A stretch of 64,000 nucleotides of DNA, taken from Octopus sinensis. Its lineage: Eukaryota. Location of the stretch: the NCBI RefSeq assembly GCF_006345805.1, contig NC_043002.1, forward strand, positions 682,001 through 746,000, read 5' to 3'. The notes beneath the pieces were generated by a model. The model had not been told where the DNA came from and did not search any database. It saw nothing but the letters and a program-made list of their open reading frames with translations. This document shows positions 15,917-52,931 of the stretch, one piece after another. Each line of letters starts with the position of its first letter. The stretch's first letter is position 1. The position numbers and the translations under genes are program-made.

Positions 15917-15960
<44 letters not shown>

Positions 15961-15964
<4 letters not shown>

Positions 15965-16428: not shown

Positions 16429-16434
16429 ATTATA

Positions 16435-27648: not shown

Positions 27649-28311
27649 TACACGGGTGGAATCACCACCCAAAGACCAAAAACAGAAAAAAACTAAAAAG
27701 AAGTCTGCCAATGATACAGAGGATCGAACGCACGAAGGGAGTGATGCAGCAACGAAAGTGAGTGAAGGTTCAACGTGGGATGAAATGGAAAAATGGTCAA
27801 CAAAAGTGGAAGAATGTCTGAAAAGATGCAAGGAAGGAGGAAGACCAAAAGGAAGAAATCTCAAAGCTATAATGTTGTACAAAAAGGATAAAGAAATTGA
27901 GAAAAAATTAGCGATAATGAAAAATCTAACGAGAGTGAAATTGAACCCGAAGATATACGATAACCAAATAAAGGCTGCAATTGTGGAAAAAGAGACGGTA
28001 AATAAATTAATAAATTTGTTTTCAAATACAGTTGTGTGCATAGCGCACTACGTTCGATATGACAGTTTGTCCGGCGTTACAGAGCAGGATGAATTACTCG
28101 TTTACATTACTGACGAACACCCCAGATAGTACAACTGTAATTGTAAATGAAACTGCGAGCTTTGGGGGGCTCGTAAGCCATTTCATTTAATTCATTATTA
28201 ATATTTCATTTCATATCATCCTTTCTGTATTTTTGCTATATGTACCCCATGTCCTGTATTGTATTGTTATGTCCCCTCTTCATTCGGGCCATTGTGCCTA
28301 TAATAAAGATA
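27649..28311 (+). mobile_element. 663-bp retroposed insertion with an orphan K/E-rich ORF C-terminus (27656-28129)
   Basis: Perfect 16-bp direct repeat CTCAACTAGCAGGACT (27633-48 and 28312-27). The ORF runs from the 5' junction to a stop at 28129, followed by a ~180-nt 3'-UTR ending in AATAAA. Absent from the paralogous element at 41.9 kb. Confidence 0.75.
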
Positions 28312-28333
28312 CTCAACTAGCAGGACTCACTAT

Positions 28334-28379
28334 CCTGGACTGATGATGGGCAAGACCCAGAAACATGCATGTCTTCAGG
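28334..28379 (+). ncRNA. Intact minimal type I hammerhead ribozyme
   Basis: CCTGGA-CTGATGA-TGGG(CAAGA)CCCA-GAAA-CATGCATG-TC-TTCAGG. Full core, 6-bp stem I with one G-U pair, palindromic stem III; predicted cleavage after C28373. Confidence 0.9.
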
Positions 28380-28614
28380 TGCTAATCCTAGCTGGTGGGG
28401 GTGCTTGCCTCCCCTTTGCGAATATAAGGACACAGGAAATATGTCAAAGCCAACAGGAAGCGTCGATGCTTCCTAGGGCTAAACAACGGTGGTGTGATTC
28501 CCTTTACGGGACTGTCACGTTATGTTCACAGTATACAACCACTCCATCGCTCCACCACCGCTCATGACTCTTTGAAACATTTAGAAATTCAATATTTCTA
28601 ATATATATATAAAA

Positions 28615-34717: not shown

Positions 34718-35772
34718 CAAGTACCTTGAGAGAAAAGTTGGACCTAAGAGGAATCAGATGTTGTGTGCAAGAGAGACGATTGCGCTGGTATGGTCATGTG
34801 GTGAGAATGGATGAAGATAGGTGTGTGAAAAAGTGCCACACCCTGGCAGTTGAGGGGACCTGTGGAAGAGGTAGACCCAGGAAAACCTGGGTCGAGGTGG
34901 TGAAGCACGACCTTCGAACTCTAGGTCTCACCAAGGAAATGACCAGAGACCGAGACCTATGGAAGTATGCTGTGCGTGAGAAGACCCGGCAAGACCAGTG
35001 AGAACAATCAAAATCAAATCATATATCAGAAAGCAGGGGTTAAGTGACCCATCTGTTCGTGTCCGCTGTCAGCCTCGTCTGGCACCTGTGCCGGTGATAC
35101 GTAAAAGCACCATTCGCTCATGGCCGTTTGCCAGCTCTGCCTGGCCCCGTGTCGGTGGCACGTAAAAGCACCATCCGTTCGTGTTCGTTGCCAGCCTCGC
35201 CTGGCCCCGTGCCGGTGACACGTAAAAGCACCGTCCGTTCGTGGCCGTTGGCCAGCTCTGTCTGGCCCCGTGTCGGTGGCACGTAAAAGCACCATCCGTC
35301 CGTGTCCGTTGCCAGCCTCGGCTGGCCCCCGTGCCGGTGACACGTAAAAGCACCGTCCGCTCGTGGCCGTTTGCCAGCTCTGTCTGGCAACCGTGTTGGT
35401 GGCACGTAAAAGCACCATCCGTTCGTGTCCGTTGCCAGCCTCGGCTGGCCCCCATGCCGGTGACACGTAAAAGCACCGTCCGTTCGTGTCCGTTGCCAGC
35501 ATCGCCTGGCCCCGTGCCGGTGACACGTAAAAGCACCATCCGTTCGTGGCCGTTCGCCAGCTCTGTCTGGCACCTGTGCAGGTGGCACGTAAAAAACACC
35601 CACTACACTCGCGGAGTGGTTGGCGTTAGGAAGGGCATCCAGCCGTAGAAACACTGCCAGATCTGACTGGGCCTGACGAAGCCTTCCAGCTTCACAGACC
35701 CCAGTTGACCCGTCCAACCCATGCTAGCATGGAAAACGGACGCTAAACGATGATGATGATGATGATGATGAT
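34718..35772 (+). mobile_element. RTE 3' fragment with a ~60-bp tandem array (8 units plus a terminal partial unit, about 35045-35600)
   Basis: ORF end ...AVREKTRQDQ*, the same array as 14958-15669, and a (GAT)n tail. Confidence 0.95.
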
Positions 35773-37439
35773 TCATTCATTGTTTTACACTGTATTCATT
35801 AATGACAAATCACATATATCATTCTAACATTTTGTCATCATAGTTAAACTATGATTTGCTAATGAGGTATATGGCCTGAACATCTTCATAGTTACCTCCC
35901 CACAACTAAAACTCACACTTACCTACCTACCTACAACCCATTTACCTATCCACCCAATGACTGACCTACCTACCTACCTGCCTACCTATGCACTCACTCA
36001 CTCCCTGCCTGTCTATATCTATCTCTTCTATACTATACTTAAATCATGAAATACCCACTTCATGGTTCTTTCTTTTCTTTTTCTATAATTAATTATTCAG
36101 ATAATTAATATATTCTCACGCTTAACGTTATAATTTTAATCAATTTCAGTTTCTGAGTTTACTACATCAAGTGGGTTTCGTCCACTTAACTATTTAGTTT
36201 TCGTGCAATAGGCGCCCCTGGACAGTTTTCTATAGTTCTTCTAGCATTCGAGAAGTGTCTACAATGTTGTCACCAAGTCATGCAGACAGGTAAAAAGAGT
36301 CACATTAAAAAGTTCTAAAATAAAATGCTAAAAGGAAGGTGAGAGATTAAGACGACGCAATTTGCGGGTTTCGTCTGATAAAAGAAAAATGACTTTATGC
36401 CAAAGTAACGGTCGAATATTCTACGAAGACATGCAATATTGAAGAGACGGTGTGAATATCAGAATCGGAATTTAAAAAAACAAAGAGATGATCTTTACCT
36501 CAGTTCAAAACCAACATTAACAAAATATTCAGTTGTTATGACAACGGAATAAACATTTTTTTCAATTAACATATATTTTATTTATTTTCGCATTTATTTT
36601 TTAATCACCAATTAATGTAATTTGTTATTTTCTTTTTCTTTTATAGAAATATAACTTTCTGCAGCAAAAATAAACAATTTTAAAAACTAAAACTTTAAAT
36701 ACTTAATACGAAAAGTCAAATACATAACAATAACAAATAATCCAATTAACTGTTTAAAATTAAAAATAATATAACTACAACGATTTTAAAATTAATTTAT
36801 AAATGAATAACGAAATCTATTTAAAAAGATATATTTATATTTTATTAATATTTTACAAAGATATGTTAATATAAATTAAAACGTGTTGTTTTACGAAGCT
36901 ACGGCTTGAAGGTGAAACCAGAGAAAGTCGAAGCAATTCCTGGAAATTCAGGTAAAAAAAAAGAAAATATTCCAGAAAAAAGATTATTTTTTAGGATTTA
37001 ATGTTTAATATTGTTTCCAGGTTTCATGTTTTTCATGTGTCGTTTGGGTGTGTGATATTTAGCAAATTATATCGAATTTGAGGAAGAACATTTATAGAAA
37101 GCTTCGTGTAAATAATTATATAAGCTTTTTGTGGAAGATTTTGGAATTGGTTAAATTCTTGGGGAAAAAGGGACGAAAAATGATTTAGATTTTAAGGACG
37201 GGGCAGAAGTATTTGGTTTAGATATCTAAAACGAACCAATAATCCTTTTATATTTTATTTCGTTCTCTTCGGCGCTAAAATGTAATTAGTTGCAATTAAG
37301 TCCCGGTCAACCTTGAGAGAGTAGGCTTAGGGTCAAAAGTATTCTAGCCGTGACCATCCAGTCTATTTTAAAATATATATTGTATAGCTAAGGCTACGGA
37401 AAGAAACAACTAATCGTGTATGACAAACGTATTAGATTA

Positions 37440-38150
37440 ATCACAGTCCATGTTTGGTCGACGCACCTTACCTTCTTCGCTCCCCAATATATCCGAGATA
37501 AACTGCAAAAATACACAAAATAGCGCACCACGCATCATCATAGATACACAAACCACTGAAACACCAAATAAGAAAAATGAAATACTATTTGGTCCTGCGA
37601 TGGAGGTGGAAGTCCGTAGAATGACAGCCAACTTCAACTCTAAATTCTCGTTGAAAATACGGAGAAATCACTGCAACGTTGGTGACTTCAGTGTCTGTAA
37701 AGCTCGCATTTGTACTCTGACCAAGTTCAGCCGAGGAACCTGCGGACGTTCAGAGATAAACTGTAAAGTGGAGACAGATCAACTGTTATTTTATACTCCA
37801 TAGAATTCACCATTTCATTCGGATTCGCACGTCGTCCAATTCGCAGCGGAAATCAAGGCTGCGAAGAGGCGACATCAGTGAAGCATGTCATAAGACAACT
37901 CTTCTTAAAGTAAACCCAAAATTTCAATATTTTAAGCAAATGTTAAAGATTAAGGATTTCCGCCTACTTCATCCTTATCTTCATTTTACGTCCACTTTTC
38001 CGTGTTTGCAATGAGTCAGACGTGATATGTAAACAATGGTTTGTTGCAGGATCATTGGGTCCGGCATGTGGATGGCTTTTAGCAGACTGAATGTTTTCAT
38101 CGTAGGGTCGTTAATAACTCGGCATTTTTCATCAATTGGTTAACTTGAAT
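37440..38150. promoter_or_regulatory. CpG-rich, repeat-free promoter/5'-exon-like region, possibly bidirectional
   Basis: CpG density is clearly higher than in the AT-rich flanks. Strong minus-strand donor GAAG|GTAAGG at 37472/37471. Twin GAGATAAACTG motifs at about 37495 and 37753. Function is inferred. Confidence 0.45.
37472..37541 (-). CDS. Possible first coding exon encoding a signal-peptide-like segment (MMMRGALFCVFLQFISDILGSEE, phase-1 donor)
   Basis: First ATG in its frame, a hydrophobic core and a consensus donor. It could instead be a 31-nt UTR exon (acceptor TTTTTGCAG at 37503). No downstream exon was identified. Confidence 0.35.
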
Positions 38151-39245
38151 GAAATCGAGTGGTAGCTGTCTCTCATCTCTTGGATTGATGTCTTGTAAGA
38201 TCACACCATTGCTGCACGTGCTGCTGGGATTCTCTCTGGTTCACACCGTATCAAGCCATGGATGTTCCAAAACTTGGTTTTGTCATTTCCAACAACAGGT
38301 AGATGTAGAGGATGATGCATCAACTCTCACACCTAAGCAGACGAGGGCATACTTTGATTTTGCCTGACTTCTACATCGAAATGTCATTCACTTGCACCTA
38401 GCCCCTGCAGACCAAACATTCTCGCCAACTCCTTAAAAAAAACCTTGTAAATATCTGCCAATAGGGTTGTGTGAATATTGTCTTCAACAGTATAACGACA
38501 CAAGCACTCCCCCTGTTACCTGGCTGCTTTGCCTTCATCAGTGGCTCTCTGGAATCTTTTTCCTGGCACAGTTTTTACTTGCAGCCATCAACTGCATTGA
38601 TTCATGACCTCGGTGACCCTATGAAGACCATAGACACAGCTCCTTCAGTCTGACCCCTTCAATAAAATAAACAAAAAAGGGGGAGGGGATATGGCAGGTA
38701 ATTATCTAAGTTAAAATCCATAGATGGAATAAACTTGAGGATTAATCTGGAACCCTTTTTTAGTTTTTGAAAACAAGTTGCCACTATTTATTTCTTTTTT
38801 ATTGATAACATCTCTAGAAGTCATCCAACTGAGTCTCATTCCTTTTTTCAAATTATTTCACTAATTTGTTTTCAGATTTCTTCTAAATGTTCTAAAAGAA
38901 GACGTTAGTTGCCTCTTTAACATCCATTAACATTTCTAAAGCAATGTGTCTTTGTTACGTCAGTGTTCAATGAAAGGTAAGTGTCAGAGCTAAATTGTTA
39001 GGTATAAAGCAAAAGACAAAACTGTTTAAGATTTGAAATACAAACTGGTTGAAAGCTTTCCAGTTGGCCAGCTCCTGTCAAGCTGTCCAACCAACATGGA
39101 CAACAGACATTAAATAATGATGATGATGATATACATTTTATTTAGTGTATATATATATATATATATATCTATATATATATATATATATATATACGTTTTA
39201 TTATTTGTATGTGTGTGTATATATATATATATATGTTTTATTATT

Positions 39246-39309
<64 letters not shown>

Positions 39310-39376
39310 TATATTTCTAAATTGAATTTTTCCCTGTAAGTTAGGAATATTATTCCCTCAAATTATATATATATAT

Positions 39377-39440
39377 ATTGGGTTGGCAAGAAAGTAACTT
39401 CGATTTTCACAAATAGAATTACGATTTTTTTTAATGACTT
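39377..39440 (+). mobile_element. Mariner terminal inverted repeat remnant
   Basis: TA-TTGGGTTGGCAAGAAAGTAA resembles mariner TIRs as I recall them. No partner end was found. Confidence 0.45.
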
Positions 39441-39469
39441 TTGTTAATGATTCCATACTTTGCTTCCAC

Positions 39470-41230
39470 AACTAAAATTTCTTCTCTCGTCCGAGTAGTG
39501 ATTCAGCTATAAGAACAAAATCATCAGCATAAAGGAGCTGCCAGGGGCAGCCCAAGTTAAATTCCTCTGTTATTGCCTGGAGGACTATGATGAACAAGAG
39601 GGGTTTGAAGACTGACCCTTGGTGAACCCCTACTTGTACACTGAATTCATTGGTATACTTGTTGCTAACTCTCACCTTACTGACAACATCCCTGTACACG
39701 GCTTGTAAGGCTCTCACCAACCATTTCTATCCGTAGTTTCTGCGTTGACCACCAGATAAGGGAGCAGGGAACCCTGTTCAAGGCTTTCTCCATGTCAACA
39801 AAAGCCAAGCACAGAGGTTTATCTTTGGCTAACTACTTCTGCAGCTGTCTTACCAAGAACATAGCCTCAGTGGTGCTCCTCTCTGGCACAAAACCAAACT
39901 ACATCTCATCTACACTAACTTTCTTCTTAATTAGTTGGGTTATGATCCTCTCAGTAACTTTCATCTCCTGATCCAACAATTTGTCACCTTTACCTTTGTA
40001 GCAGTTGACTATGGTGCTGCTACACTACTCACTGGGTATGACTCCCTCGCGTACAACCTAAACGACTATACTGGTGACTAGACCATAACCCACACCACCA
40101 GATATTTTAAGCATCTCAGCAGTGATTCCTGATGGGCCAGGGGCTTTCCCTCTTTTCATATCCTCCATGGCTTTGTCTTTACCAAGCTGCTGTCTATTCA
40201 GATAGCTGCTTACTCTGTTGGATCCACATTGGACATTTAGCAGCCTTTCACAGTGGCACTTCTTCCAAGCCTCTTCCTTAGCAGAGTCACCAACTGCAAG
40301 TGAACGCATTCCTTTCCAACAACTTCACAATACTCTCACACACTGCCTCACAAATGTCACCCTAGGTCTTGTTGGGACTTTGTTCCAACCACAAATTTGA
40401 CCTGTGGCTCTCAGTAAGTTGTGTTGTATGAATTTCCAGTTATCGTCTGTGTTACATGTCTGTAACTCCTCCTCCTCCTAATTAAATGCTTCAGTTAGGA
40501 TGTCTCTAAACTTCTGACTATTCAAAGGAGCCTTAAGCTTCCAGATCCTTCTTTTCCAAACTGGCTTGCTTCTTGGAATCCTTTATGCCTGTAGTTTGAA
40601 GCCACTAGAGTCTAATCTATGCTGAAGCGAACATTCTTCACCTGGGAAAGTCTTTCCATTTATGAGCAACTCTGAATGTTGCTTTCTGGTGAGAATGTCG
40701 TCAGTGTGGTTGGCATGGTCACCAAATTTATAGGTTATCAGATGATTAGATGGTTTCCTGAAGTCAGTGTTGCAGATCATCAGGTCATTTTTCATCACAG
40801 AACTCCAACAGCCTTGTTCTCTCCTCATCTTGGGACCAATTCCACAGTCCCCTTGTACCCTATGGAAGACACTTGGATGCTGCCCAACATCTCCATTGAA
40901 ATCACCAGCCACAAAGATATGGTTACTGTCATTTGTCTTTGAGGTATCCTGTCGTAAAAATGATCCTTTTTCCCATTTGGTTTGGAGGCATAAGCAGAGA
41001 TTGCTGCTGTGCTATTCCGCAAAACTAGTCTGAGCTTAAATACCCTGTCACATACTCAGACTACCTCAGTCACCTTACCCATTTCTCTGCTAGAAGTATG
41101 CCCACACCTCCTACCCTGTTGCAGTTGCCCTCCCAGAAGAATTCATACCTATGCTTTTTACCTGTGTGGAACTTGGCTGTAGTTCCCCCCCCCCTTAGAT
41201 CTCACCAGTCTTACAGTGCCAACCCTGAGT
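39470..41230 (-). mobile_element. Degenerate RTE LINE spanning the endonuclease N-terminus to RT
   Basis: Minus-strand LRVGT, SAYA, AGDFNG, APGPSGITAEMLK, HQGSV and LYADD. Confidence 0.9.
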
Positions 41231-41899
41231 GAATGTACAAGGAGGTAGCATGGGGAGGGGGAATAATGGCTTTCGGCATCTGAAAAGGTTTAATGAGCTT
41301 TTGCCAATAGATCTAGCATAACAGTTGCCCTCTCATTTAAACCACCATCATTCATGTTACACCTGCTGCCACCACCAGAAGTATTAGTACAGACACAAGT
41401 AACAATAATAACAATAATAATAATAAAAATGGTGGAAACTAACTGATTAATTATTGTTGCCTCCATTGGAAGTGGGTGCTGTAGTCCAGCATTAGTACAA
41501 GCAATGTTAGTACAATATATGTATATATTTATAATCATGCTGATGATGATAATATATTATCTATCTTTCTATACACAAACATTCACTCTCTCTACTTTTC
41601 ACATTTTGATGGGATCAGCAGAGAAGTTACGCAGTTCAGTGAGGGATTCATCTAATTTAATGCAGACAGCAATTATAGATAAAAGTTTCAAGCTTACACG
41701 GGTAATGGGAGTCTCTCTCTCACTCTCTACTGTCTAAGCATAAAACTTGAAGTAACTCTTGTATATCTCCTGCATTCATTAAATGATTTGTGTGTGTATA
41801 TGTAAATATATATATATATATATACTTCATGATTCTGTGCTGCTACTGGTTACTTCTCACTCAGAGATTTATTATCGCTTGTTTCTCCTTTTTCGAGAT

Positions 41900-42155
41900 C
41901 AGCGACAGTTTGTCACTGGAAGAAAGCATATAGTATTTTGCGTTTGGAATAAGTTCTCATCGCTAGCTGGTGATTATCACACACTGATGACTGGTTACTA
42001 ATCAGAAACCCAGGTCTGTGTGTATCACATAAGGTTAGATATGGGAACGATGATTTCCCTTTGCAAATAGTAATCGGACACAGACAGTGTGTCATTAGCC
42101 AGCTGGAGATGTCACCCTGGGGCTATAAACAACAGTTGCATCGTCCCCTATGGGT
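41900..42155 (+). mobile_element. Hammerhead-containing non-coding structured element, copy 2
   Basis: Same ordered blocks as 27571-28583: CAG(T/C)GA..TCACTG hairpin, TCTCA..CTAGC.GG, hammerhead, CCCTTTGC.AATA, GGACACAG..TGTC and GGGCTA..AACAAC. Confidence 0.7.
41978..42022 (+). ncRNA. Minimal type I hammerhead ribozyme
   Basis: CACACA-CTGATGA-C-TGGTT(ACT)AATCA-GAAA-CCCAGG-TC-TGTGTG. Stem I extends via GTGAT/ATCAC; GUC triplet, predicted cleavage after C42016. Confidence 0.82.
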
Positions 42156-42714
42156 CCACCACATTTAGGTGGCAAATATACTTCACGATGTATGTATACA
42201 TATATATATTAATTATAATGACCCTCATCAAGGCTGTTTACAAGCTAAGTTCGGTGCCAGCATAATGTAATGAACCAAGACATTTCACTTAAGTGACTTC
42301 TTTGCTGAAGGGAAAGAATCATTAGCTTAATTATGATTAAATCCAGGGTATGGAGATAACGATGGGCAATGTAATGGTGTGTTGTTGTTGTTGGCAGTCT
42401 AGTGTCATCTGTGGGCATGTTTTGGAGTCATTAGAACTCCTCAGCAAAGGCTAACATTTACCAATACTAGCAGATAAATGCAACTGGAGAGAGAGAGAGA
42501 AGGAGAGGAACGCTTGAATCGTGAGAGAGGTGATGAAAGTGTAAAAAGCCAGGGATTCTCTGCGTGAAATAACAAATGCAGAGGTGACCATGTTTGTTTT
42601 TAAATTTCATCTGAAACAAACAAAATAATTATTTTTATTGATAAAACTTTATATTAATGGTGGACATAAGCAGTTGGACTTGTTGCTATGAGACAGAAGA
42701 GTCTTAGGTATCAT

Positions 42715-43160
42715 TCATCGTCATCATTTGATGTTTGTTGTCCATGCTGACATGGATTGGGCAGTTTGACCAGAACTGCAAGCTGGGGAGCTACACCAGA
42801 CTCCAGTCTGATTTAGCATGGTTTCTATGGCTGAATGCCCTTCCTAACATGCCAATCACTTTACAGAGTGTGCCGGGTGCTTTTACGTGGCACTGCCATG
42901 AATGCTTTTCATCACCAGAGGGGTCAGTCTTGACACTTGCGTACAAGGTGCCAGACATCTCCCCTGAAGGTTCAGCCCCCTGAGCTTGTTCTTCAGTCCT
43001 TCATCCCATGTCTTCCTGAGCCTCTATCAAACTGCTACCCTTACATTACACACCCGGTGGAGCCTGCTAGCCTCATTCCTATCTGACCTTTGCATGTCCT
43101 CTGCATTCATGGCCCACATCTCTCTACCATCTACAACTGCTGTCTGTATACATGCATCAA
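42715..43160 (-). mobile_element. Old RTE 3' fragment
   Basis: (CAT)n tail and a degenerate conserved 3'-UTR. Confidence 0.7.
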
Positions 43161-43975
43161 CAGCAACCATCATCAACCTGGCAGGCATTGGTTTGTTGCT
43201 TCAGCACCCACACTTTATATTTCTTTTTTATTGATTCCACAAACATTCTCCTCGTACAGAATGTTCTAGAAGCTTCCATCACTGCTCACGGCAGAGATTT
43301 TTCTCTTTCCAAGAAATGTACCACTTCCTACCTTCTTCATTGCTACACTTTCCATACAAACACAGGTCAGAGACTACTAGAAAGAACAGCTAAATTTCTT
43401 TCATATTACTCTATAGTCTTACAAAAAAAGGAAAGATGATATCATAATACTGAGTAAAAGCAAAATAACACTGGACGGTCACATCTGGAGTGCTTTTAAC
43501 CCCCTGTCTGCTTGATCCAAGCTAATATGGTTTAAACATCAATCAACATTGTCATCTTTCCATCATACCTTAACTCCTTTGATACCAACCCACTTGTGGC
43601 CATCACTGCTTTTGTGATACAAACTTTGGTTTAAATTAAAACCTTCCAACAAAGCTTCTTGCTAATTTCAATCCCAAACATCAACTTAATAACAACAAAG
43701 TTTTTTTTTACTAAATTCTTCATTATTTTAAAAATAAATTGAAACAAAATTTGTGTGGGAAATGGTAATGAAACGGTAAACTAGTGCCTCTTGTTTTACC
43801 AAAGCCGTCACTGATTTCCTTTCCTAAAGGCTGAACACATTTAGTATTGATTCAGGTGCAAATAACGAATTAACTTTTAATATAAGTTTGTTGGTTTTCC
43901 AATGCCTCTGTTTCTTTTGGAGATCATAATTTTTGGTATCATTAACAACTATACTACTACTACTACTACTACTCT

Positions 43976-44389
43976 AGGTACAAGACTTGAAATCTGAGGT
44001 GAGCAGGTGAGTTGATTATATTGACCCCAGTGCTCAACTGGTACATATTTTATCAACCCCACCGAAAGGATAAAAGATAAAGTCTACCTTGGTGCAATTT
44101 GAATTCCGTGCCTAAAGACTGACAAAATGTCATTAAGCATTTACCTGGTGTACCTGCTCACCGTTTCAACAATAATAATTGTTTCTAATATAAGCACAAG
44201 GCCTGCAATTTTAAGGGTAGGGGCAAATTGATTGCATCAACCCCAGTGCACAACTGGCACTCATATTATTGACCCCACTAAAAGATAAAAGGCAGAGTTG
44301 ACCTCAGCAGAATTTGAACTCAGAACCTAAAGATGAATGTCACTAAGCATTTCACCTGACATGCTAATGATTCTGCCAACTCACCACCT
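43976..44389 (-). mobile_element. Two tandem copies of a second tRNA-derived SINE (Nin/Deu-domain-like)
   Basis: Copies at 43976-44163 and about 44180-44389. B-box GAGTTCAAATTC and core ...CTTTTATC(C)TTT...GGGGT..ATAA..TGTACCAGTTG.GCACTGGGGT. The domain name is from memory. Confidence 0.75.
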
Positions 44390-44720
44390 TAAATAATAAC
44401 AACAACAACAACAACAATAATAATAATAATAATTTCCTTTAATTGAAGAGAAATACTGTTGAGCCGAAGTATTTAGGAAGATTTAGTATCTCAATAAGTG
44501 AAATGAAAGTGAAAGTTGTTGAGGAGAGAAATCTTTGTTATGTGAGTGTGAAGACAGGTTTATAATTTGATTAAGCACAAAGAATATCTGGGGGTGAAAC
44601 TGTTTCATATTTTATTGATTGTGGAGTGGGGGGCAGGGGTTGAAAGTAAGGTTAACCCATGTTTGAAATCAACAATATTCTTATAAGAGATAATTAATGA
44701 TTAAAATTAAAAACAACTGT

Positions 44721-45173
44721 CATCATCATTGTTCGACCGTGGTTGAGACAATGGAATTTACTATGTTACGCCAGACTTCACAGTTCATCATAGCATTACG
44801 GAGGTCCTGTTGCTGGATGCCTGTATCCCTGGAGATTACATCAGGGTAGGAGAGTGCGCGCCCTCTGGTATCATGAGCAGAGGGCTTCCAGAGGAGAAGA
44901 GTAGAAATTACCTCGTTTTCAGCTTTACAACAATGTCCAGCAAACTGAACTCTTCTACCTTTCACAAGAGATGATACAGGTGGTAATTTCCAATATATTT
45001 GTACTTTGGTTGGATGACGCTTCCACGAGAAATTTTGAGCTGTTATAAGGAGGTGAGTGTAGGTTCCATCCAACTGCCTCTCAAGCTTCTTTGATAACGT
45101 CCAGGTTTCTGAGCCATATTGTAGAATTGGTTTGACTGTGGCTTTGAAGATCTTAAGTTTGAAATCTCTACTT
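44721..45173 (-). mobile_element. RTEX-like LINE 3' fragment (same family as 4627-5478)
   Basis: DGTYTHLL...SYPDVISRDTGI...STTVEQ. 10-bp TSD AAACAACTGT at 44711-20 and 45174-83. Confidence 0.9.
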
Positions 45174-45257
45174 AAACAACTGTAATGGGCTAACTTTATG
45201 CTAATTTAGACAATTAACTATTTTTAATGCCCCCCCCCCCTTTTTTTTCTTCAGAAC

Positions 45258-45381
45258 ATGAAGCAATGGACAAGAACACAAGTATATGATGGATTGCACC
45301 GAGCATCTGTGTGGACTTTACTTGGAATTACAGGCTACGGCCTTACTGTGCTGGGCTCATATGCCTTCAGGTATTTCAGAG
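45258..45381 (+). CDS. COX14: COX14-like cytochrome c oxidase assembly factor, coding exon 1 (MKQWTRTQVYDGLHRASVWTLLGITGYGLTVLGSYAFRYFR)
   Basis: Polypyrimidine-TTCAG acceptor at 45254, ATG at 45258 and phase-1 donor G|GTAAGA. The D-x-(L/I)-H-R motif plus a single TM helix resembles yeast Cox14 as I recall it. Confidence 0.75.
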
Positions 45382-45954
45382 GTAAGATTTTTTTGTTAGT
45401 TTACATTTGAAGCCTAAATTTAGAGAAATCAGAGTTAACTACAATATACTGCAGTGGTAATTATATTTATTTGTGTGTCGAAGCTAGACTTAATGTGTCA
45501 CAATATAATTTGATGATAGGATGGCAATTTTGTCAGATGATGATGGCAAGTTCCGTAACTCATTGTGCCTTAGGAACAGCAGAATGGATTTAATTTTCTT
45601 CAAACTGTATGTCAAGAATCAATCAGCAAGACAAAGACTATTTCAAACATGAAAACTGTGCAAATAACAAAACATGTCTCTGCTTGACATTGTTGTTACT
45701 GTTAGTGGTTTGAACCATTGACGACAGTTTTGTGTCTCCTTCACTCTTGGGACTGGGTAAAATGTACCAAACTAGGTCTCTTCCCACATAAGTCAATGGA
45801 AATATTTGCGAATTCTAATCTGGTCAGATATATTTAGAAGTCTTATGTTCTTTACTGTCAGCACAATGGCTTAGTAAAACCAACTGTTGTCTCTCTCTCT
45901 CTCGACAACAAAGATTTTGTCTCTGTGGACAAAGTACACACTAAGGGGTCCTGA

Positions 45955-46112
45955 AGGCAGTGAGCTGGCAAAATGCCTGGCAGCATTTCATCCGCCTCTA
46001 TGTTCTGAGGTCTACTTTGTCTTTCAATCTTTCGGGATCACTAAAATAAGTTCCTGTTGAGCACTAAGGTCACTGTAATTGACTCTAAACTTACAGGCCT
46101 TGTGCCCGGAGG
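45955..46112 (+). mobile_element. Degenerate Nin/Deu-like SINE
   Basis: GGCAGTGAGCTGGCA head and core TTTCAATCTTTCGGGATC...AAAATAAGT. Confidence 0.65.
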
Positions 46113-46114
46113 AG

Positions 46115-48628
46115 GAGCTACAATTCTGTGACACAGCAGGCAGCTGGGAATTCTTGCGAGACTGACCAAATTTGTGGCTGGTGCAAAGTCCCTTCCAGAC
46201 CTAGGATAACATGGTAGTGGAACAATACTGTAGACAGGGCCATTGGAGCCTGAAATCCTGGAAGAGTTGGGGTAGCTGGAGACTGTATCAGATAGCCAAA
46301 AGGGAAGCTAAGGGACAGGTATATATAGCCAAGGGTGTAGCAGAAAAGAAGAAGTTTGCCAATGTTCAGTGACATGAGGACCAGAGAACTGAAATATTTT
46401 GGATTGCAAGGCGGTGTGTGAGAGAAAACCATGATGTCATAGGAAAGGAATGTGTATGTATGGATGATGGTGTCCTTGCGTCTAATGTTCTGCAAAGAAA
46501 GAGGCTTGGAGAGGCCATTATGAAAGACTGCTGAATGTGTAGAATGAATGGGAGGAGGAGAGCCTGCCAAATGTTAACCCAGTAGAGGGTCCAGCTACCG
46601 GAATCGACAGTATCCTGGTATATAAAGCAATTAAAGATATTAAGACAGGGAAAGCCCCTGGCCCGTCAGGAATCACTGCTGAGATGCTTAAAATATCGGG
46701 TGGTGTGGGTTATGGTCTTGTCACCGGCATCGTAAATCAGGTAGTTCATGAAGGAGTCATACCCAATGACTGGTGTAGCAGCACCATAGTCAACTACTAC
46801 AAGGGGAAAGGTGATGCTTTAGATAGAAATAACTACAGGGGTATCAAATTATTGGATTAGGTGATGAAAATTACAGAGAGGGTCATAGCCCAACTAATTA
46901 GGGAGACAGTTAGCCTAGATGAGATGCAGTTTGGTTTTGTGCCAAGCAGAAGCACCACTAATGCTATATTTCTGGTAAGGCAACTACCTAGCCAAAGATA
47001 AACCTTTGTACTTGGCTTTTGTTGACTTGGAGAAAGCCTTTGACAGGGTCCTCTGGTGGTCAGTGCAGAAACTGGGGATAGACGAATGACTAGTAAGAGC
47101 TGTACAGGGATGCTGTCAGTAAGGTGAGCATTGGCAACAAATACAGCGAAGAATTCCGGGTAGAAGTAGGGGTTCACCAAGGATCAGTCCTCAACCCCCT
47201 CTAATTCATTATAGTCCTCCAGGCAATAACAAAGGAATTCAAGACAGGCTGCCCTTGGGAGCTCCTCTATGCTGATGACCTTGCTCTAATAGCTGAGTCA
47301 CTGCCAAAGCTGGAGACAAAGTTTAGGGTGTGGAAGCAAGGTCTAGAATCGAACGGCCTTAGAATCAATCTAGCAAAATCCAAAGTCCTAGTAAGTAGGA
47401 AAGCTGTCAAATCACAAACCCCTTCAGGTAGATGACTCTGCTTGACCTGTAGAAAAGGTGTGGGTAGAAACTCCATAAAATGTACCTGGTATAAGCTATG
47501 GACACATAAGAGGTGCAACAATATCAGAGAAAGGTTAATCAGAAAAATAGTTTTTGTGTGTGGCAGATGCACGGGGGCAATAAACGCAGAACATGTACAG
47601 AAAACAGATTCCAGCACATGCCAGGGGAAGAAACTAGAAATAGTTAATAGCTTCTGCTATCTAAGCGACCAAGTCTGTAGTTGGGTTGGTTGCTGTGAGA
47701 GTGTAGTGACTAGAGTAAGGATAGCCTGGGCAAAGTTCAAGGTGCTCCTACCTCTGCTGACAATTAAGGGCTTCTCGCTCAGGGTGAAAGGTAGACTGTA
47801 TGATGCATGTGTGCAAACAGCCATGCTACATGGCAGTGAAACATGGGCTATGAATGCTGAGGACATGCATAGGCTCGAAAGAAATGAAGCTAGTATGATC
47901 TGCTGGATGTGTAATGTCAGTGTGCACACCCGACAGAGTGTAAGCACTCTGAGTGAAAAGTTGGGCATAAGAAGCATCAAATGTGGTGTGCAAAAGAGAT
48001 GACTGCACTGGTACGGCCATGTGTTATGTATGAATGAAGATAGCTGTGTGAGGAAGTGCCACTCCTTACCTGTAGAAGAGGTAGACCCTGGAAAACATAG
48101 GATGAGGTGAAGCATGATCTTTGAACACTGGGCCTCACAGAGGCAATGACAGGAGACTGGGACCTTTGGAGATATGTTGTGATTGAGAAAACCTGGCAAC
48201 TAAAGTGAGATGGCAGCCACACATGTTCAGCCCTGTTAAAAATACTCCTGATGCGTTGGGTGATATGATATGCTTGAGAAGACCTGTTGAGTCAAGTAAA
48301 ACCAATATTGTAGCTGGGGCCGGTGCCCCCTGACTGGCTCCCGTGCTGATGGCATGTAAAAAGCACCAACTAATTGTGACCGATGGCACATAAAAAGCAC
48401 CATCTGAACGTGATCGTTGCCAGGCCCACCTTACTGGCTCCTTTGCCAGTGGCATGTAAAAAGCCACTACACTCTCAGAGTGGTTGGTGTTAGGAAGAGC
48501 ATCCAACTGTAGAAACTCTGCCAAACCAGATTGGAGCCTGGTACAGCTGCTGGTTCTCCAGACCCCAGTCAAACCGTTCAACCCATACCAGCATGGAAAA
48601 CGGACGTTAATCAATAATGATGCTGATG
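46115..48628 (+). mobile_element. Degenerate RTE LINE in the COX14-like intron
   Basis: Linker-to-tail similarity to 12.7-15.8 kb with many stops and frameshifts; about three 3'-UTR units. Confidence 0.92.
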
Positions 48629-50605
48629 AATATAAGGTGGAAGACACCTGATTTGATGCATAAAAGAAGTGGAGAGTAATTAGCTGAATAGGATCCATTT
48701 CTTTAAGTTGCTTGGATCATCCTAACCAGCTGAATTCTCTCTCCTCACTAATCACCTTCCACTTAATTATCACATTGTAACAGTAACCTTTTGCCCAACA
48801 AAATAAAATCTTTGTGGCCAAGGGATAATAATTCTCTCTAATCAACCTTTTCCCAACTCACCAAGCAATTTATTTCTTACTTTTCAGTCCTCACTCAATG
48901 AATTTCATTGCATTTGCTGTTCCGGGTACTTCTTTTTTTTTTTCATCTTAGCATGCCGACTTCTTCCAAGTCTCAAATCTTTTCTGCAGTTCTTCCATAA
49001 CAATCATTCATTGCCCTCACACAGTCATCTTTCAGTTTCCACACTTTTCCTCTGCTTCTGACCAACATGGGCATTAAATGATGATGATAATATTTGTATC
49101 GCAAAACGAGTTCGATTCATATTTATTCCTTTTAACACAACTCTATACACTTTGTTTGTTCCCCTTCATTTCTCTTAATCATCAACATATAACATCCATT
49201 TTACAGTTGGATGGACAGGGTCATTAAATTTCCTGTTATAACGAATATTCCTGTCTTTGTTGTAGTCCAGCATAAATCCTCACAAAACCAATACTTTTGT
49301 ACGTTTATTCTGTTTTTGCAGACATGTTGAGCAGTCATTGCTTTAGCTGTAACGATTAGACCAGTAGTTCATGCTCGTTACCTCCAATTACGTTGCTTGT
49401 TCATTCCTCCTCAGCTGTTCTACAATTATCACTCATTCACAACTTCTGCTATGGGCTCTGCTTGTTGCAATACTTATCCCACAATTTCTTTATATTCTAG
49501 CACATTTATTTGCTTCTCCTGTTTATCCACAATGACATTGAATTATCACAAACAAATATCCTTTAACTTGGGGTCATTGCTGTCGGTCGAACTGCTCTGT
49601 AACAGTCAGCAATATCCACGTCTGGCATCATTATGGCTAACCACTATCAGCTTGAGATCTTTCTGAAATATGATTGTTCATTTTATTCTAGAACAATACT
49701 GCTATTATCATCATCATCATTTAATGTCTGTTTTCTATGCTGGCATGGGTTGGATAGTTTGCCCTTCCTAACACCAACCACTTTACAAGAGAGTGCCGAG
49801 TGCTTTTCAAGTGGCACCATCACCAACAGAATGCCCACATAACTTGCAGGACAAAACCCTCGTCAGCTGGGAGGAGAGAGTAGTGTTGAGTGGGGTGGCT
49901 TTGTGTTAGTTGATGAGAGATTGAAGCATAGGGGGTCAGGGATGGGTGTCTTGCTGTAGATTCATGGATACCCCAACTGGAAAGGAGAGTGAATTAGAGA
50001 GTAAGATGAAGAGAATGATAGGGAGAGAGAGAGATGGTGGCAAAGATTTGTTAGGACATGCCCTCGAGGAATGGGTGAGCGAACAGGATAGAGGTGACCA
50101 AGGCAAACGATGGAGAGATGTATAGGAGAAGCTTGTGGGGTGGGTGCAGTAGAGAGCATTTAGTAGAGACAGGGGAAGATAATGGGAAGTGGGTCAGCGT
50201 AGGGGAAGGAAGGCAACTGAGAAAGCTGGGGGCAGGATGAATGTGCCTATTCTACTCTCAGGTGATAGAGGATGAAAGGTGGTGGGAGAAGAGGATAGAG
50301 TTAAAGGTGTCATTTGAGCATTGGGCCTCATGGAGGCAATGTGACCAATGCCAGTGGCACGTAAAAGCACTCATTACATTTTTGGAGTGGTTGGCATTAG
50401 GAAGGGCATCCAGCCATAGAAACCATGCCAAAGCAGACTGGAGTCTGGTGCAGCCCCTCAGCTTACCAGCCAACCCATGCCCGCATGGACAACAGACGTT
50501 AAATGAAGATGATGATGATAATGATATTTGTAATGTTGGGTTTAAATTTATAGCTGGATAATTATCCAGTTGTTAGGCAGACAGTGAATTGGTTGGGTTT
50601 GGTAA

Positions 50606-50961
50606 TCTTTTATTTGTTTGTCATTTGACTGCAGCCATGCTGGAGCACTGCCTTAAAGGGTTTTAGTCAAACAAATCAACCTCGGGACTTATTCTTTGGA
50701 AGCCTAATTATTTTATCAGTCTCTTTTTACTGAACCATTACACAGATGTAAACCCACCAACATCAGTTGTCAAGCGATGGAGTGGGGGACGGACACACAA
50801 CAGGCTTCTTTCAGATTCTGTCTACTAAATCCACTCACAAGGCTTTGATCGACCCAAGGTTATAGCAAAAGACACTTGCCCATGGTACCATGCAGTAGGA
50901 CTGAACCTGAAACTATGTGGTTGGGAAGCAAGCTTCTTACCACACAACCACGCCAGCACCT
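50606..50961 (-). mobile_element. CORE-like tRNA-derived SINE, near full length
   Basis: Reverse complement matches 9521-9910 without the internal microsatellite. Confidence 0.85.
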
Positions 50962-51182
50962 ATGAAAACATTTCTAGAAAAAGTGTTGTAAAACATTAAA
51001 AACCCTCTCTAATCAGTTTTAGCAAAGAATCTCTGAATGCTCTTCAATGAGCAAAAAACAACCATAAAACATTCCCATTCCTTAAGTTCAATTTCTATGG
51101 CTGTTGCAGTTTTTACCTGATATTGTAAATTAGCAGAGTTTTGGACTTAATGATTTTCAGCAGACGTTTATTTCCTAAAATG

Positions 51183-52035
51183 AATCATCATCATCATCAT
51201 CATCGTGTAACGTCCGTTTTCCATGCTGGCATGGGTTGGATGGTTCGACTGGGGTCAGGGAAGCCAGAAGGCTGCACCAGGCTCCAATCTGATCTGGCAG
51301 CGTTTCTACAGCTGGATGCCCTTCCTAACGCCAACCACTGGCACAAGGGGCCAGAGGAGGCTGGCATCAACCATGATCGGATGGTGCTTTTTACGTGCCA
51401 CCGGCACAGAAGTCAGTCAAGGCAACGCTGGCATTAGCCATGTTCAGATGGTGCTTTATACGTGCAACTGGCACAGGGGGGTTCACAACTGTAATTTCCA
51501 TTTGATTTGATTTTGATATTGTTATTGATGTTGATGTACTTGACTCAATAGGTCTCCTCAAACACGGCATGTCACCTAACAACCCTAGGTACTTTTGAGT
51601 GGGATGGTTATGCAACACTGGTGTAGGTTACAGCTGTTAACTCACTTTATTTGCCGGGTCTTCTCAGTCACAGCGTATCTCCCGAGGTCTCGGTCTTTTG
51701 TCATTGCCTCTGTGAGGCCCAAAGCTTGAAGGTCATGCTTCACCACCTCATCCCATATCTTCCTCTACCCAAAATTCCTTCAACTGTTTGGGAGTGGCAC
51801 TTCTTCACACAGCTCTCCTCGCCCCTCCACAGTACATGACCATATCAATGCAAACATCTCTCTTGCACGCCACATCTGATGCTTCTTATGTCCAACATTT
51901 CTCTCAGGGCGCTTACACTCTCTCGTGTGTGCACACTGGCATTACACATCCAGCGGATCATGCTAGCTTCGTTTCTTTGAAACCTACACACGTCTTCAGC
52001 AGTCATGGTCCGTGTTTCACTGCCGTGAAGCATGG
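51183..52035 (-). mobile_element. RTE 3' fragment
   Basis: (CAT)n tail, 3'-UTR and ORF C-terminus (HGSET...NEASMIRWMCN). Confidence 0.88.
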
Positions 52036-52249
52036 CAGGAATAGAACTGTTTAGTTTGAGATGTTCTGTCATCATTTCATATTTGAAGAGTTCAAAGAAT
52101 AAACTGGAATGTTCTTTCTGCTCTACATTTTTATGTTTGTTTACTAAATGTAGAATAACAATTTGCTTTAAATAAACTTTAAAAGCAAGTCTTGTAGACA
52201 TGCTTTTTGTTTAAATGCACAGTGTTTATATTCCATTTCTCCTTTTCAG

Positions 52250-52374
52250 AGGTTCGCCCAATGCAGAAAGAACTGAGGAGAAAGCAGAATGAGGAATCCA
52301 TAACTCTTGAACAAATTGAAGGTGAAAAGGAACTTCGGCAGAAACAATCTGATTCTGAAACCCTCTACTCTTAG
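52250..52374 (+). CDS. COX14: COX14-like coding exon 2 (EVRPMQKELRRKQNEESITLEQIEGEKELRQKQSDSETLYS*)
   Basis: Acceptor TTTCTCCTTTTCAG at 52249. The phase matches exon 1 (G|AG), giving an 82-aa protein with a charged coiled-coil-like tail. Confidence 0.72.
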
Positions 52375-52931
52375 AAGTTTGGGATGAACAATTTTTGCTT
52401 TATTAACTGTTGTTGCTGTTAGGTAAACAGCATAAATTAATAGTTTTTATTTTTCTTCAGAGCCAAAACAGAAATTCGAAAGCATGATTGCAATGTTACA
52501 TCGAACATACGTTAAGCAGGAATTGTTATTGAATCCTTTCATAAAGGGCAAGAATAAAACTGCACCTCTTTCTTGCAGCATTTCAAATGTTATTCGCTGC
52601 CTAAGTATGCCACATGTATTTCTTTTGTAAATATAATGTTTCAAAAGATGTTTTTCTTTAGAGTTATGTTTGTTTGTCAAGATCTTTCTGAACAACAGTA
52701 ATTTTAACAATTACCAAACTCCAAAACAATTTGATGAAATACAAAGCCCTAGAGTTTTCTCATTTCTTCTAAACTCTTTAAAATTCCATTTAGGGACAAT
52801 TGCTTTGAGATGTAAGAAACAGGTTGTTGTCAAAAAGGCAACAAAATCTAACTCTACAGACTATAAACCTGTCCAATTCTGAAGATGATAGGTACTGCTT
52901 CATTCAATCATATCTTACACTCGTGTGCGGC

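What the first reader, a model, noticed from the sequence alone, without database searches (positions are those of the whole stretch)
41900..42155. Second, uninterrupted copy of the hammerhead element, probably inside the COX14-like 5' intron in sense orientation
Complete core (CUGAUGA, GAAA, GUC) with an extra C before stem II and a near-palindromic stem III (CCCAGG). If the host transcript starts near 38 kb, the pre-mRNA contains a potentially self-cleaving ribozyme, which could affect host processing or release the element RNA. Its divergence from copy 1 with preserved pairing argues for functional constraint on the progenitor family.
Basis: partly seen in the sequence, partly recalled or inferred. 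Interest (0 to 1): 0.7.

Follow-up and report, generated by a model that had tools for sequence, protein, structure and literature searches.

The report
Decayed hammerhead ribozyme retroelement copy
This is a real but ordinary fossil: a single, worn copy of a mobile element that carries a hammerhead self-cleaving RNA motif, sitting upstream of a COX14-like exon in an octopod-like genome and probably no longer able to cut itself.

Summary
A complete hammerhead core (CUGAUGA, GAAA, GUC) lies at 41984-42016 (+), with a 6-bp helix I, a 5-bp helix II, an extra C after A9, and the helix III sequence ACCCAGGU. The predicted cut is at 42016/42017. A homologous copy lies at 28283-28531 (about 55% identical over about 245 nt). 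Six of the 13 shared helix pairs changed on both sides and none is broken. A descriptor scan finds only these two sites in 64 kb, against 0.005-0.02 expected. The best reading is a solo, 5'-truncated insertion of a Penelope-like-element or non-LTR-retrozyme type hammerhead element. It is about 342 nt (41834-42175), flanked by a 14-nt direct repeat inside a TA microsatellite. Copy 2 looks catalytically crippled. Helix III cannot close as a monomer, its self-dimer helix is weak (-4.8 against -13.3 kcal/mol for copy 1), stem II closes with U-A instead of G-C, and there is no tandem partner. No Rfam hammerhead model matches either copy. The COX14-like exon (45258-45382, +) is real and needs an upstream intron, and the element is in sense. 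Its intronic position is plausible (CpG profile) but unproven. This is a new member of a known kind and of low interest.

The parts
41820..41833 (+). Left copy of the 14-nt direct repeat ATATACTTCATGAT, a candidate target-site duplication at the edge of the (TA)n microsatellite 41797-41824
   Evidence: the repeat finder family D3; TRF (TA)14 at 41797-41824
41834..42175 (+). Element copy 2: a 342-nt insert as bounded by the direct repeat
   Evidence: not part of any tandem array
41926..42168 (+). Part of copy 2 that is homologous to copy 1
   Evidence: nhmmer E=9.6e-66 against the two-copy profile; alignment A1; the regions 5' of this are not significantly similar
41963..41974 (+). 5' arm of a distal extension of helix I (CUAGCU, GUGAU), which pairs with 42024-42038
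   Evidence: MFE fold of 41926-42175, z=-2.5; pairs listed. Copy 1 has an equivalent extension at 28316-28325/28386-28396
41978..41983 (+). Helix I, 5' strand (CACACA)
41984..41990 (+). Core C3-A9 (CUGAUGA)
41991..41991 (+). Extra unpaired C between A9 and position 10.1
   Evidence: an unpaired nucleotide here is described for PLE min-hammerheads (PMC4209133)
41992..42004 (+). Helix II hairpin UGGUU-ACU-AAUCA, closed by U10.1-A11.1 instead of G-C
42005..42007 (+). Core G12 A13 A14
42008..42015 (+). Helix III segment ACCCAGGU. It is near-palindromic, with three possible pairs around a 2-nt loop, and could be usable only in a dimer
   Evidence: a monomer with a 2-nt loop is impossible; the self-duplex is -4.8 kcal/mol
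42016..42016 (+). C17; predicted cleavage between 42016 and 42017
   Evidence: cleavage was not tested
42017..42022 (+). Helix I, 3' strand (UGUGUG)
42024..42038 (+). 3' arm of the distal helix I extension (AUCAC, GGUUAG)
42043..42093 (+). Hairpins shared with copy 1: GGGAA/UUCCC, then the conserved block CCCUUUGCAAAUA, then GACACA/UGUGUC
   Evidence: RNAalifold on A2; single-sequence folds
42156..42172 (+). 3'-terminal hairpin CCACC-ACAUUUA-GGUGG next to the AT-rich flank, a candidate start site for reverse transcription
   Evidence: The analogy is to the AC-rich stem-loop where a PLE reverse transcriptase initiates (PMC11167929); this is inference
42176..42189 (+). Right copy of the 14-nt direct repeat (ATATACTTCACGAT; 13 of 14 identical), followed by TA/TG microsatellite
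28283..28531 (+). Element copy 1, the homologous part. Its hammerhead is at 28334-28379: CCUGGA CUGAUGA UGGG CAAGA CCCA GAAA CAUGCAUG UC UUCAGG
   Evidence: the homodimer cofold gives the double-hammerhead structure
45258..45382 (+). COX14-like coding exon (context, not part of the element), with an acceptor AG ending at 45254 (3 nt before the ATG at 45258) and a GTAAG donor at 45383
   Evidence: Pfam PF14880 at 26.8 bits, cut-off 25; sequence

Best explanation
Copy 2 is a solo insertion of a hammerhead-bearing retroelement of the Penelope-like-element (PLE) / metazoan non-LTR retrozyme kind. It is either the 3'-terminal piece of a 5'-truncated PLE unit or a single unit of a non-autonomous derivative. 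The inferred history is as follows. In the progenitor, multimeric transcripts carried the type-I hammerhead in every unit. Two neighbouring hammerheads paired through their palindromic helix III sequences to form a double hammerhead, which cut the RNA into units. A PLE reverse transcriptase with its GIY-YIG endonuclease then copied the RNA into AT-rich DNA. This insertion landed in a (TA)n microsatellite and duplicated about 14 nt of target. It carries only one hammerhead and has since decayed. The helix III palindrome is broken: CCCAGG is one transition away from CCCGGG or CCUAGG, and the first route is an ordinary CpG-to-CpA change. There is an extra C after A9. As a result it now sits as a passive fossil, probably within the 5' intron of a COX14-like gene and in sense, with little or no self-cleavage. 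Shown here: the motif, the homology between copies, the compensatory changes, the solo status, the flanking repeat, and the thermodynamic weakness. Inferred: the retrotransposition route, the inactivity, and the intronic position.
For: - The motif is beyond chance: two sites in the window against 0.005-0.02 expected.
- The two copies are homologous over about 245 nt. Six of 13 shared helix pairs changed on both sides and none is broken, at about 55% overall identity.
- Copy 1 shows what the intact design looks like: a 6-bp helix I, a 4-bp helix II and the palindromic CAUGCAUG. Its homodimer minimum-energy fold is the double hammerhead, at -31.3 kcal/mol against 2 x -11.1 for two monomers. This is the architecture described for metazoan type-I and PLE hammerheads that work as dimers (PMC4209133; PMC7229834).
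- An unpaired nucleotide between A9 and 10.1 is a recorded trait of PLE min-hammerheads.
- Copy 2 is not in a tandem array, and only two copies exist in the window.
- A 14-nt direct repeat flanks a 342-nt insert inside a TA microsatellite. Only 5.7% of the window lies within 30 nt of a (TA)>=5 run, yet both copies abut one. PLE endonucleases prefer AT-rich or microsatellite targets (PMC8557442; PMC11167929).
- Both copies end in a hairpin, and copy 2's is AC-rich. This resembles the reverse-transcription start site of the Anolis PLE.
- PLEs are abundant in Octopus (PMC13282606), and 235 Hammerhead_1 loci were reported in the giant squid (PMC6962438).
- Retrozyme monomers are common, and about 44% overlap introns in Xenopus (bioRxiv 10.64898/2026.07.22.740005).
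- On weakness: the monomer hammerhead fold scores -3.8 against an MFE of -12.1, and the dimer helix III scores -4.8 against -13.3 kcal/mol for copy 1. An extra C at this position was strongly detrimental in the CChMVd hammerhead.
Against: - No PLE open reading frame (RT plus GIY-YIG) is visible next to either copy or among the window's ORFs of 110 aa or more, so the link to PLEs rests on architecture and literature.
- I could not reach any other family member. The protein-word searches found nothing. The metagenome pattern hit was a chance match in a bacterial gene. A 22-kb Argonauta locus held none. Consensus, copy number and tandem progenitors are therefore unknown.
- No Rfam hammerhead model matches either copy.
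- Both copies have U10.1-A11.1 instead of the G-C pair said to be highly conserved in PLE hammerheads.
- The flanking repeat is partly low-complexity (ATATA), so the target-site duplication is likely rather than certain.
- The 92 nt at the 5' end of the insert have no counterpart in copy 1.
- Inactivity is predicted from energies, not measured. One PLE hammerhead is protein-assisted, so weak helices do not prove inactivity in vivo.
Confidence: 0.75

Rival explanations
1. The element is an active, possibly exapted, intronic hammerhead. It would cut the COX14-like pre-mRNA in cis, affecting host processing or releasing element RNA.
For: The core is complete and in sense with the COX14-like exon. 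Helix I is fully paired and extended distally, and the 250-nt element folds better than shuffles (z=-2.5). Conserved intronic hammerheads in amniotes are a known precedent (my own knowledge; Rfam has families HH9 and HH10). A PLE hammerhead can be protein-assisted (PMC11167929).
Against: Helix III cannot close in a monomer and is weak in a dimer. There is no second copy in the putative transcript. Copy 1 lies 13.6 kb upstream, outside the putative transcript, and its helix III is not complementary. The extra C and the U10.1-A11.1 pair are both unfavourable. The flanks look like a transposon insertion. Retrozyme monomers in introns are commonplace. Neither conservation nor transcription could be checked.
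Confidence: 0.06
2. It is specifically one unit of a non-autonomous tandem 'non-LTR retrozyme' that circulates as a roughly 340-nt circular RNA, rather than the truncated end of an autonomous PLE.
For: The insert length of 342 nt and a GC content of about 0.38-0.40 fit the 150-450-nt, low-GC units described for metazoan retrozymes. A target-site duplication longer than 4 bp also fits (PMC7229834). Copy 1 has the canonical 6-bp/4-bp/short-palindromic type-I architecture. No PLE coding sequence adjoins either copy. Monomer derivatives are frequent.
Against: There is no tandem arrangement at either locus. The two copies share only about 245 nt, and their 5' parts do not align, which fits variable 5' truncation better than full units. 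I found no terminal redundancy beyond the 14-nt repeat. Retrozymes and PLE pLTRs are reported to be related anyway, so the distinction may be one of degree.
Confidence: 0.35
3. It is a pol III SINE carrying a hammerhead, like Schistosoma Sm-alpha.
For: It is short, dispersed, non-coding and carries a hammerhead. The Schistosoma precedent is from my own knowledge.
Against: ARAGORN finds no tRNA-like sequence anywhere in the window. I saw no convincing A or B boxes and no A-rich or simple-repeat tail belonging to the element. The 3' end is a hairpin.
Confidence: 0.04
4. It is a chance hammerhead-like string in CA/TG- and TA-rich DNA.
For: Helix I is (CA)3/(TG)3, which is low-complexity sequence. 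No Rfam hammerhead model matches.
Against: The expected number of such sites is 0.005-0.02 per window and two were found. The second site lies in a homologous element and shows compensatory changes in all three helices.
Confidence: 0.01

Closest known systems
Hammerheads of Penelope-like elements (min-HHRs and small type-I variants; Cervera & de la Pena 2014, PMC4209133)
   Same: Type-I topology. Helix III is very short and palindromic, which implies action as a dimer. There is an unpaired nucleotide between A9 and 10.1 (copy 2). Family members are full of compensatory changes. Most genomic copies are isolated, truncated single motifs. Insertion is into AT-rich or microsatellite DNA.
   Different: Stem II closes with U10.1-A11.1 in both copies, instead of the highly conserved G10.1-C11.1. 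No PLE reading frame or pLTR pair is present in this window. The palindrome is broken in copy 2.
Metazoan non-LTR retrozymes (Cervera & de la Pena 2020, PMC7229834; Li et al. 2026 preprint)
   Same: Unit-like size (about 340 nt), low GC, a type-I hammerhead with a 6-bp helix I and a 4-5-bp helix II, a target-site duplication longer than 4 bp, and a branched or rod-like fold around an extended helix I. Monomer derivatives are common and often intronic.
   Different: The defining tandem arrangement is absent at both loci. Circular RNA was not shown. The two copies share only part of their length.
Poseidon PLE of Anolis carolinensis (PAc; PMC11167929)
   Same: In PAc the hammerhead sits at the pLTR/ORF junction, the ORF starts at stem II, and the cut site lies 26 bp further on. 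Reverse transcription starts in an AC-rich stem-loop roughly 90 nt beyond the cut and joins to AT-rich DNA. In copy 1, A9-U10.1-G10.2 is an AUG 27 nt before the cut and opens 73 codons. Copy 2 ends in an AC-rich hairpin against a TA repeat.
   Different: The open frame in copy 1 is not statistically unusual (7.6% of the window's ATGs do as well) and has no detectable relatives. The distance from the cut to the 3' end is about 159 nt here. No sequence comparison with PAc was possible.
Conserved intronic hammerheads of amniotes (Rfam HH9/HH10)
   Same: Sense-oriented, apparently intronic, and probably retroelement-derived.
   Different: From my own knowledge, those have stable helices that work as monomers and are ultraconserved. 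This copy has neither property that I could show, and it gets no Rfam hit.

Membership tests
Hammerhead ribozyme, type I | Conserved core: C3 U4 G5 A6 N7 G8 A9, G12 A13 A14, the A15.1-U16.1 pair, and H17 (not G) | tested here: met
   All are present in copy 2 (41984-41990, 42005-42008, 42015-42016) and in copy 1
Hammerhead ribozyme, type I | Helices I and II flank the core in type-I order (open helix I) | tested here: met
   Helix I has 6 of 6 pairs and helix II 5 of 5 pairs in copy 2; copy 1 has 6 of 6 and 4 of 4
Hammerhead ribozyme, type I | A helix III able to form | tested here: inconclusive
   In copy 2 the three possible pairs enclose a 2-nt loop, which is sterically impossible. The 2-bp alternative gives a whole-motif energy of -3.8 against an MFE of -12.1. 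The dimer helix is -4.8 kcal/mol with two mismatches. Copy 1's dimer helix is 10 bp at -13.3
Hammerhead ribozyme, type I | G10.1-C11.1 closing pair and no insertion in the core | tested here: not met
   Both copies have U10.1-A11.1, and copy 2 has an extra C after A9. Such deviations are known in natural hammerheads
Hammerhead ribozyme, type I | Score at or above the gathering threshold of an Rfam hammerhead covariance model | tested here: not met
   No hammerhead family is reported at gathering score or at E<=10 on stretches of about 420-600 nt or about 60 nt around either copy
Hammerhead ribozyme, type I | Site-specific self-cleavage 3' of H17, giving 2',3'-cyclic-phosphate and 5'-OH ends | not testable with these tools
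   Needs transcription or cleavage assays, or end-mapping
PLE-associated hammerhead element | Family members differ by compensatory changes in the helices | tested here: met
   Six of 13 shared pairs changed on both sides, one on one side, none broken. Only two sequences were available
PLE-associated hammerhead element | Palindromic 15.2-16.2 and loop 3, and an unpaired nucleotide between 9 and 10.1 | tested here: inconclusive
   Copy 1 has a perfect palindrome (CAUGCAUG) but no extra nucleotide. Copy 2 has the extra C, but its palindrome is broken by a C.A/A.C pair
PLE-associated hammerhead element | Lies in a pLTR of a unit encoding RT plus a GIY-YIG endonuclease | tested here: inconclusive
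   No such reading frame lies near either copy or among the window's ORFs of 110 aa or more. This is expected for truncated copies, and the source genome could not be searched
PLE-associated hammerhead element | Insertion into AT-rich or microsatellite DNA | tested here: met
   Copy 2 splits a TA microsatellite and has a 14-nt flanking repeat. Copy 1 is followed about 70 nt downstream by (TA)5 at 28602-28611. Only 5.7% of the window is that close to such a run
Metazoan non-LTR retrozyme | Head-to-tail tandem units of 150-450 bp, each with a type-I hammerhead | tested here: not met
   TRF finds no such array at either locus. nhmmer finds only the two dispersed copies
Metazoan non-LTR retrozyme | Expressed as linear and circular unit-length RNA | not testable with these tools
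   No transcript data were available

The most novel reading that the evidence does not exclude
The U10.1-A11.1 pair shared by both copies may not be decay. It could be the signature of an undescribed cephalopod PLE lineage in which the start codon of the element's protein is A9-U10.1-G10.2, so that the ribozyme and the translation start overlap. In addition, copy 2, sitting in sense within the COX14-like 5' intron, could have been kept as a protein-assisted cleavage site or as a pLTR-derived alternative promoter for that gene.
Probability: 0.05. Interest if true: 0.5.

Novelty: new member of a known kind. Interest (0 to 1): 0.2.

Why it matters
This adds an octopod example to the known link between type-I hammerheads and Penelope-like or retrozyme elements. 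It also shows that such copies escape every Rfam hammerhead model, so Rfam-based counts in cephalopod genomes probably undercount them. For the COX14-like gene the practical message is negative. The motif should not be annotated as a functional intronic ribozyme without cleavage or conservation data. The only point of wider interest is whether U10.1-A11.1 reflects an overlap between the ribozyme and an element start codon.

Tried and rejected
- **Rfam.** I ran the whole window at gathering score, and both copies at E<=10 on long and very short stretches. No hammerhead family was reported; the hits were only noise from miRNA, snoRNA and sRNA families.
- **More copies in the window.** blastn and nhmmer found none beyond the two. 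A weak inverted hit at 27607-27660 (E=0.03) rests on CCTTTGCAAATA plus a TA run, has no hammerhead next to it, and I judged it chance.
- **Internal dimer or terminal redundancy.** The first part of copy 2 against its second part (a 15-nt echo of helix II at 41845-41859), and copy 1's 3' end against its 5' end, were not significant against shuffles.
- **Relatives elsewhere.** The COX14 exon peptide and the copy-1 frame translation found no database proteins. Exact look-ups of ORFs across both copies and of a LINE ORF found nothing on record. The conserved-block pattern in metagenomes gave one hit, inside a bacterial gene. A 22-kb Argonauta hians locus and a 2-kb ENA contig, reached through a LINE RT, contain no hammerhead or element.
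- **tRNA-like head.** ARAGORN found none. The bacterial-type promoter and terminator scan is irrelevant here.
- **Coding reading of copy 1.** The 74-codon frame has no Pfam match and its length is not unusual.
- **Thermodynamic stability of the 3' domain.** It is not different from shuffles (z=-0.2 and -1.5).
- **Supplements of two papers.** They held no usable sequences.

Full report
**Observation.** The plus strand at 41978-42022 reads CACACA-CUGAUGA-C-UGGUU-ACU-AAUCA-GAAA-CC-CA-GG-U-C-UGUGUG. Every conserved hammerhead core position is present. Helix I has six pairs and helix II has five. There is one extra C (41991) between A9 and stem II.

I wrote a descriptor requiring the core, an optional extra nucleotide, a fully paired helix II, UH, and at least 5 of 6 helix I pairs. 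It finds only two sites on both strands of the 64 kb: this one and 28340-28373. In 200 dinucleotide-preserving shuffles the mean was 0.005-0.02 sites, and no shuffle gave two. The motif is real and beyond chance.

Against this, no Rfam hammerhead model matches either copy. That holds at gathering score and at E<=10 on stretches of about 420-600 nt or about 60 nt. The short helix III and the U-A closing pair of stem II are the likely reasons. This kind of small hammerhead is also reported to escape standard searches (PMC4209133).

**Two homologous copies.** The two sites belong to one element family. 28280-28524 and 41926-42168 align at about 55% identity, and nothing else in the window matches. 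Between the copies, 4 of 6 helix I pairs, 1 of 4 shared helix II pairs and 1 of 3 helix III pairs are changed on both sides, one more is changed on one side, and none is broken.

Both copies also extend helix I distally: 41963-41974/42024-42038 in copy 2, and 28316-28325/28386-28396 in copy 1. They share several downstream hairpins and conserved blocks such as CCCUUUGCRAAUA and GGACACAG. Both end in a hairpin.

**What the element is.** Neither copy is in a tandem array. Copy 2 is bounded by a 14-nt direct repeat, ATATACTTCAYGAT, at 41820-41833 and 42176-42189. This encloses 342 nt inside a TA/TG microsatellite. Joined, the flanks would read as continuous microsatellite, as expected for a target-site duplication.

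The 92 nt at the 5' end of this insert have no counterpart in copy 1. That fits different 5' truncation points. Copy 1 is followed about 70 nt beyond the end of homology by (TA)5, and only 5.7% of the window lies that close to such a run.

Copy 1 shows the intact design: a 6-bp helix I, a 4-bp helix II and the perfectly palindromic CAUGCAUG. The minimum-energy fold of two copy-1 molecules is the classical double hammerhead with a 10-bp helix III, at -31.3 kcal/mol against 2 x -11.1 for two monomers.

This is the architecture described for metazoan type-I hammerheads and for the hammerheads in the pseudo-LTRs of Penelope-like elements. Those have short palindromic helix III sequences that work only as dimers, often an unpaired nucleotide between A9 and 10.1, families full of compensatory changes, and mostly isolated truncated genomic copies (PMC4209133). 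The related non-LTR retrozymes have units of 150-450 bp, low GC, target-site duplications longer than 4 bp, and circular RNA intermediates (PMC7229834).

PLE endonucleases prefer AT-rich or microsatellite DNA. The Anolis Poseidon PLE starts reverse transcription in an AC-rich stem-loop a short way beyond the hammerhead (PMC8557442; PMC11167929). Copy 2 ends in the hairpin CCACC-ACAUUUA-GGUGG (42156-42172) directly against the TA repeat.

PLEs are abundant in Octopus (PMC13282606), and 235 Hammerhead_1 loci were reported in the giant squid (PMC6962438). I therefore read copy 2 as a solo, 5'-truncated PLE-type or retrozyme-type insertion.

The weak points are these. No RT/GIY-YIG frame is present in the window. 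I could not reach the rest of the family.

**Is copy 2 a working ribozyme?** Probably not.
- The three possible helix III pairs enclose a 2-nt loop, which cannot form.
- With the 2-bp alternative, the hammerhead fold scores -3.8 kcal/mol against -12.1 for a competing fold.
- In a homodimer, helix III (ACCCAGGU) has two central C.A mismatches and scores -4.8 kcal/mol, against -13.3 for copy 1. The predicted homodimer is not a double hammerhead.
- Pairing with copy 1's helix III scores 0 kcal/mol (all).
- CCCAGG is one transition from CCCGGG (a CpG-to-CpA change) or from CCUAGG, so a post-insertion mutation is the simplest explanation. This is inference.
- In the CChMVd hammerhead an extra A at the A9/10.1 position is tolerated, but C or G there is strongly detrimental (PMC3705267).
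- Both copies have U10.1-A11.1 instead of the conserved G-C pair.
- Even intact PLE min-hammerheads cleave poorly in vitro and not at all as single motifs.

One caution remains. A PLE hammerhead has been found to be protein-assisted, so inactivity in vivo is predicted, not proven.

**Host context.** The ORF at 45258 matches Pfam COX14 above its cut-off (26.8 against 25 bits). The ATG sits 3 nt after a long polypyrimidine tract and AG, and the exon ends at a GTAAG donor. It is therefore an internal exon on the plus strand, and a 5' intron must lie upstream.

CpG observed/expected is about 1.1-1.3 at 35-38 kb and 0.17-0.46 from 38 to 53 kb. That is compatible with an unmethylated promoter near 38 kb followed by a methylated gene body. 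A plausible donor (AAG|GTAAAC) lies near 37910.

The element is in sense and 3.1 kb upstream of the exon. Its intronic position is plausible but unproven. In Xenopus, about 44% of retrozyme copies overlap introns, so such a position would be unremarkable.

The source organism is octopod-like. The best named relatives of a LINE reverse transcriptase in the window are from Argonauta hians, at 63-64% identity.

**Comparison and verdict.** The element works like, and most probably is, a PLE/retrozyme-type type-I hammerhead element.
- It meets the core, helix I and II, covariation and AT-rich-target criteria.
- It fails the G10.1-C11.1 criterion, the Rfam-score criterion and, for retrozymes, the tandem-array criterion.
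- Cleavage and circular RNA could not be tested.

One detail may deserve a look if the family is ever studied. In copy 1, A9-U10.1-G10.2 forms an AUG 27 nt before the cut and opens 73 codons. This recalls the Anolis PLE, whose ORF starts at stem II 26 bp before the cut. However, 7.6% of ATGs in this window open frames that long, and the peptide has no relatives.

Overall this is a genuine but ordinary retroelement fossil: a new member of a known kind, of low interest.

Noticed in passing
window 45258-45382 (+): A COX14-like coding exon (Pfam PF14880, 26.8 bits). A polypyrimidine-AG acceptor lies 3 nt before the ATG and a GTAAG donor follows ...RYFRG. The remaining C-terminal exon was not located. 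A database word search with the 42-aa peptide found nothing.
   Followed up: partly
window 35000-38200 versus 38200-53000: A sharp change in CpG observed/expected, from about 1.0-1.3 to 0.17-0.46. This looks like a promoter island followed by a CpG-depleted, presumably methylated, gene body. A candidate 5'-exon donor AAG|GTAAAC lies near 37910.
   Followed up: partly
window 28343-28567 (+): The AUGs inside copy 1's hammerhead core (28343, and 28346 = A9-U10.1-G10.2) open a 73-74-codon frame across the rest of the element. This resembles the Anolis PLE, where the ORF starts at stem II. The length is not statistically unusual, and there is no Pfam or database relative.
   Followed up: partly
window 28532-28612 (+): Beyond the end of homology, copy 1 continues with an AC-rich stretch (CAACCACTCCATCGCTCCACCACCGC) before a (TA)5 run. 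This could be the optional 'tail' seen at PLE insertion ends.
   Followed up: no
window 16540-19775 (+): A nearly intact LINE with two long ORFs, of 546 aa (endonuclease part) and 525 aa (reverse transcriptase). The closest named relatives are hypothetical proteins of Argonauta hians (63-64% identity), and the best hit overall is 76% identical on a metagenome contig.
   Followed up: partly
window 3355-4631 / 13638-14914, and copies near 21.1-22.4 kb, 28.6-29.2 kb and 47.1-48.1 kb: Several copies of an RTE-like LINE 3' region in both orientations (78-94% identical). The fragment that begins about 85 nt after the end of copy 1's homology (28615) is one of them.
   Followed up: no
window 14958-15683 and 35033-35574: GC-rich tandem arrays with a 61/123-nt period (GTGGCACGTAAAAGCACCATCCGTTCGTG...), followed by a shared tail of about 150-300 nt ending in (ATG)n. 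They look like the repetitive body of an abundant SINE-like element.
   Followed up: no
window 58458-60017: A Tc1-like transposase ORF (59206-59778, with the ...WPAQSPDLNPIENVW motif) lies between 192-nt inverted repeats (58458-58649 / 59826-60017, 95% complementary).
   Followed up: no
window 15959-16430: A 165-nt inverted repeat, 99% complementary, with a 142-nt spacer, just upstream of the LINE ORF.
   Followed up: no
window 27656-28129 (+): A lysine/glutamate-rich 157-aa ORF immediately upstream of copy 1 with no family match (only a weak sub-threshold SPT16_C hit). Its antisense strand holds the weak partial match to the element at 27607-27660.
   Followed up: partly
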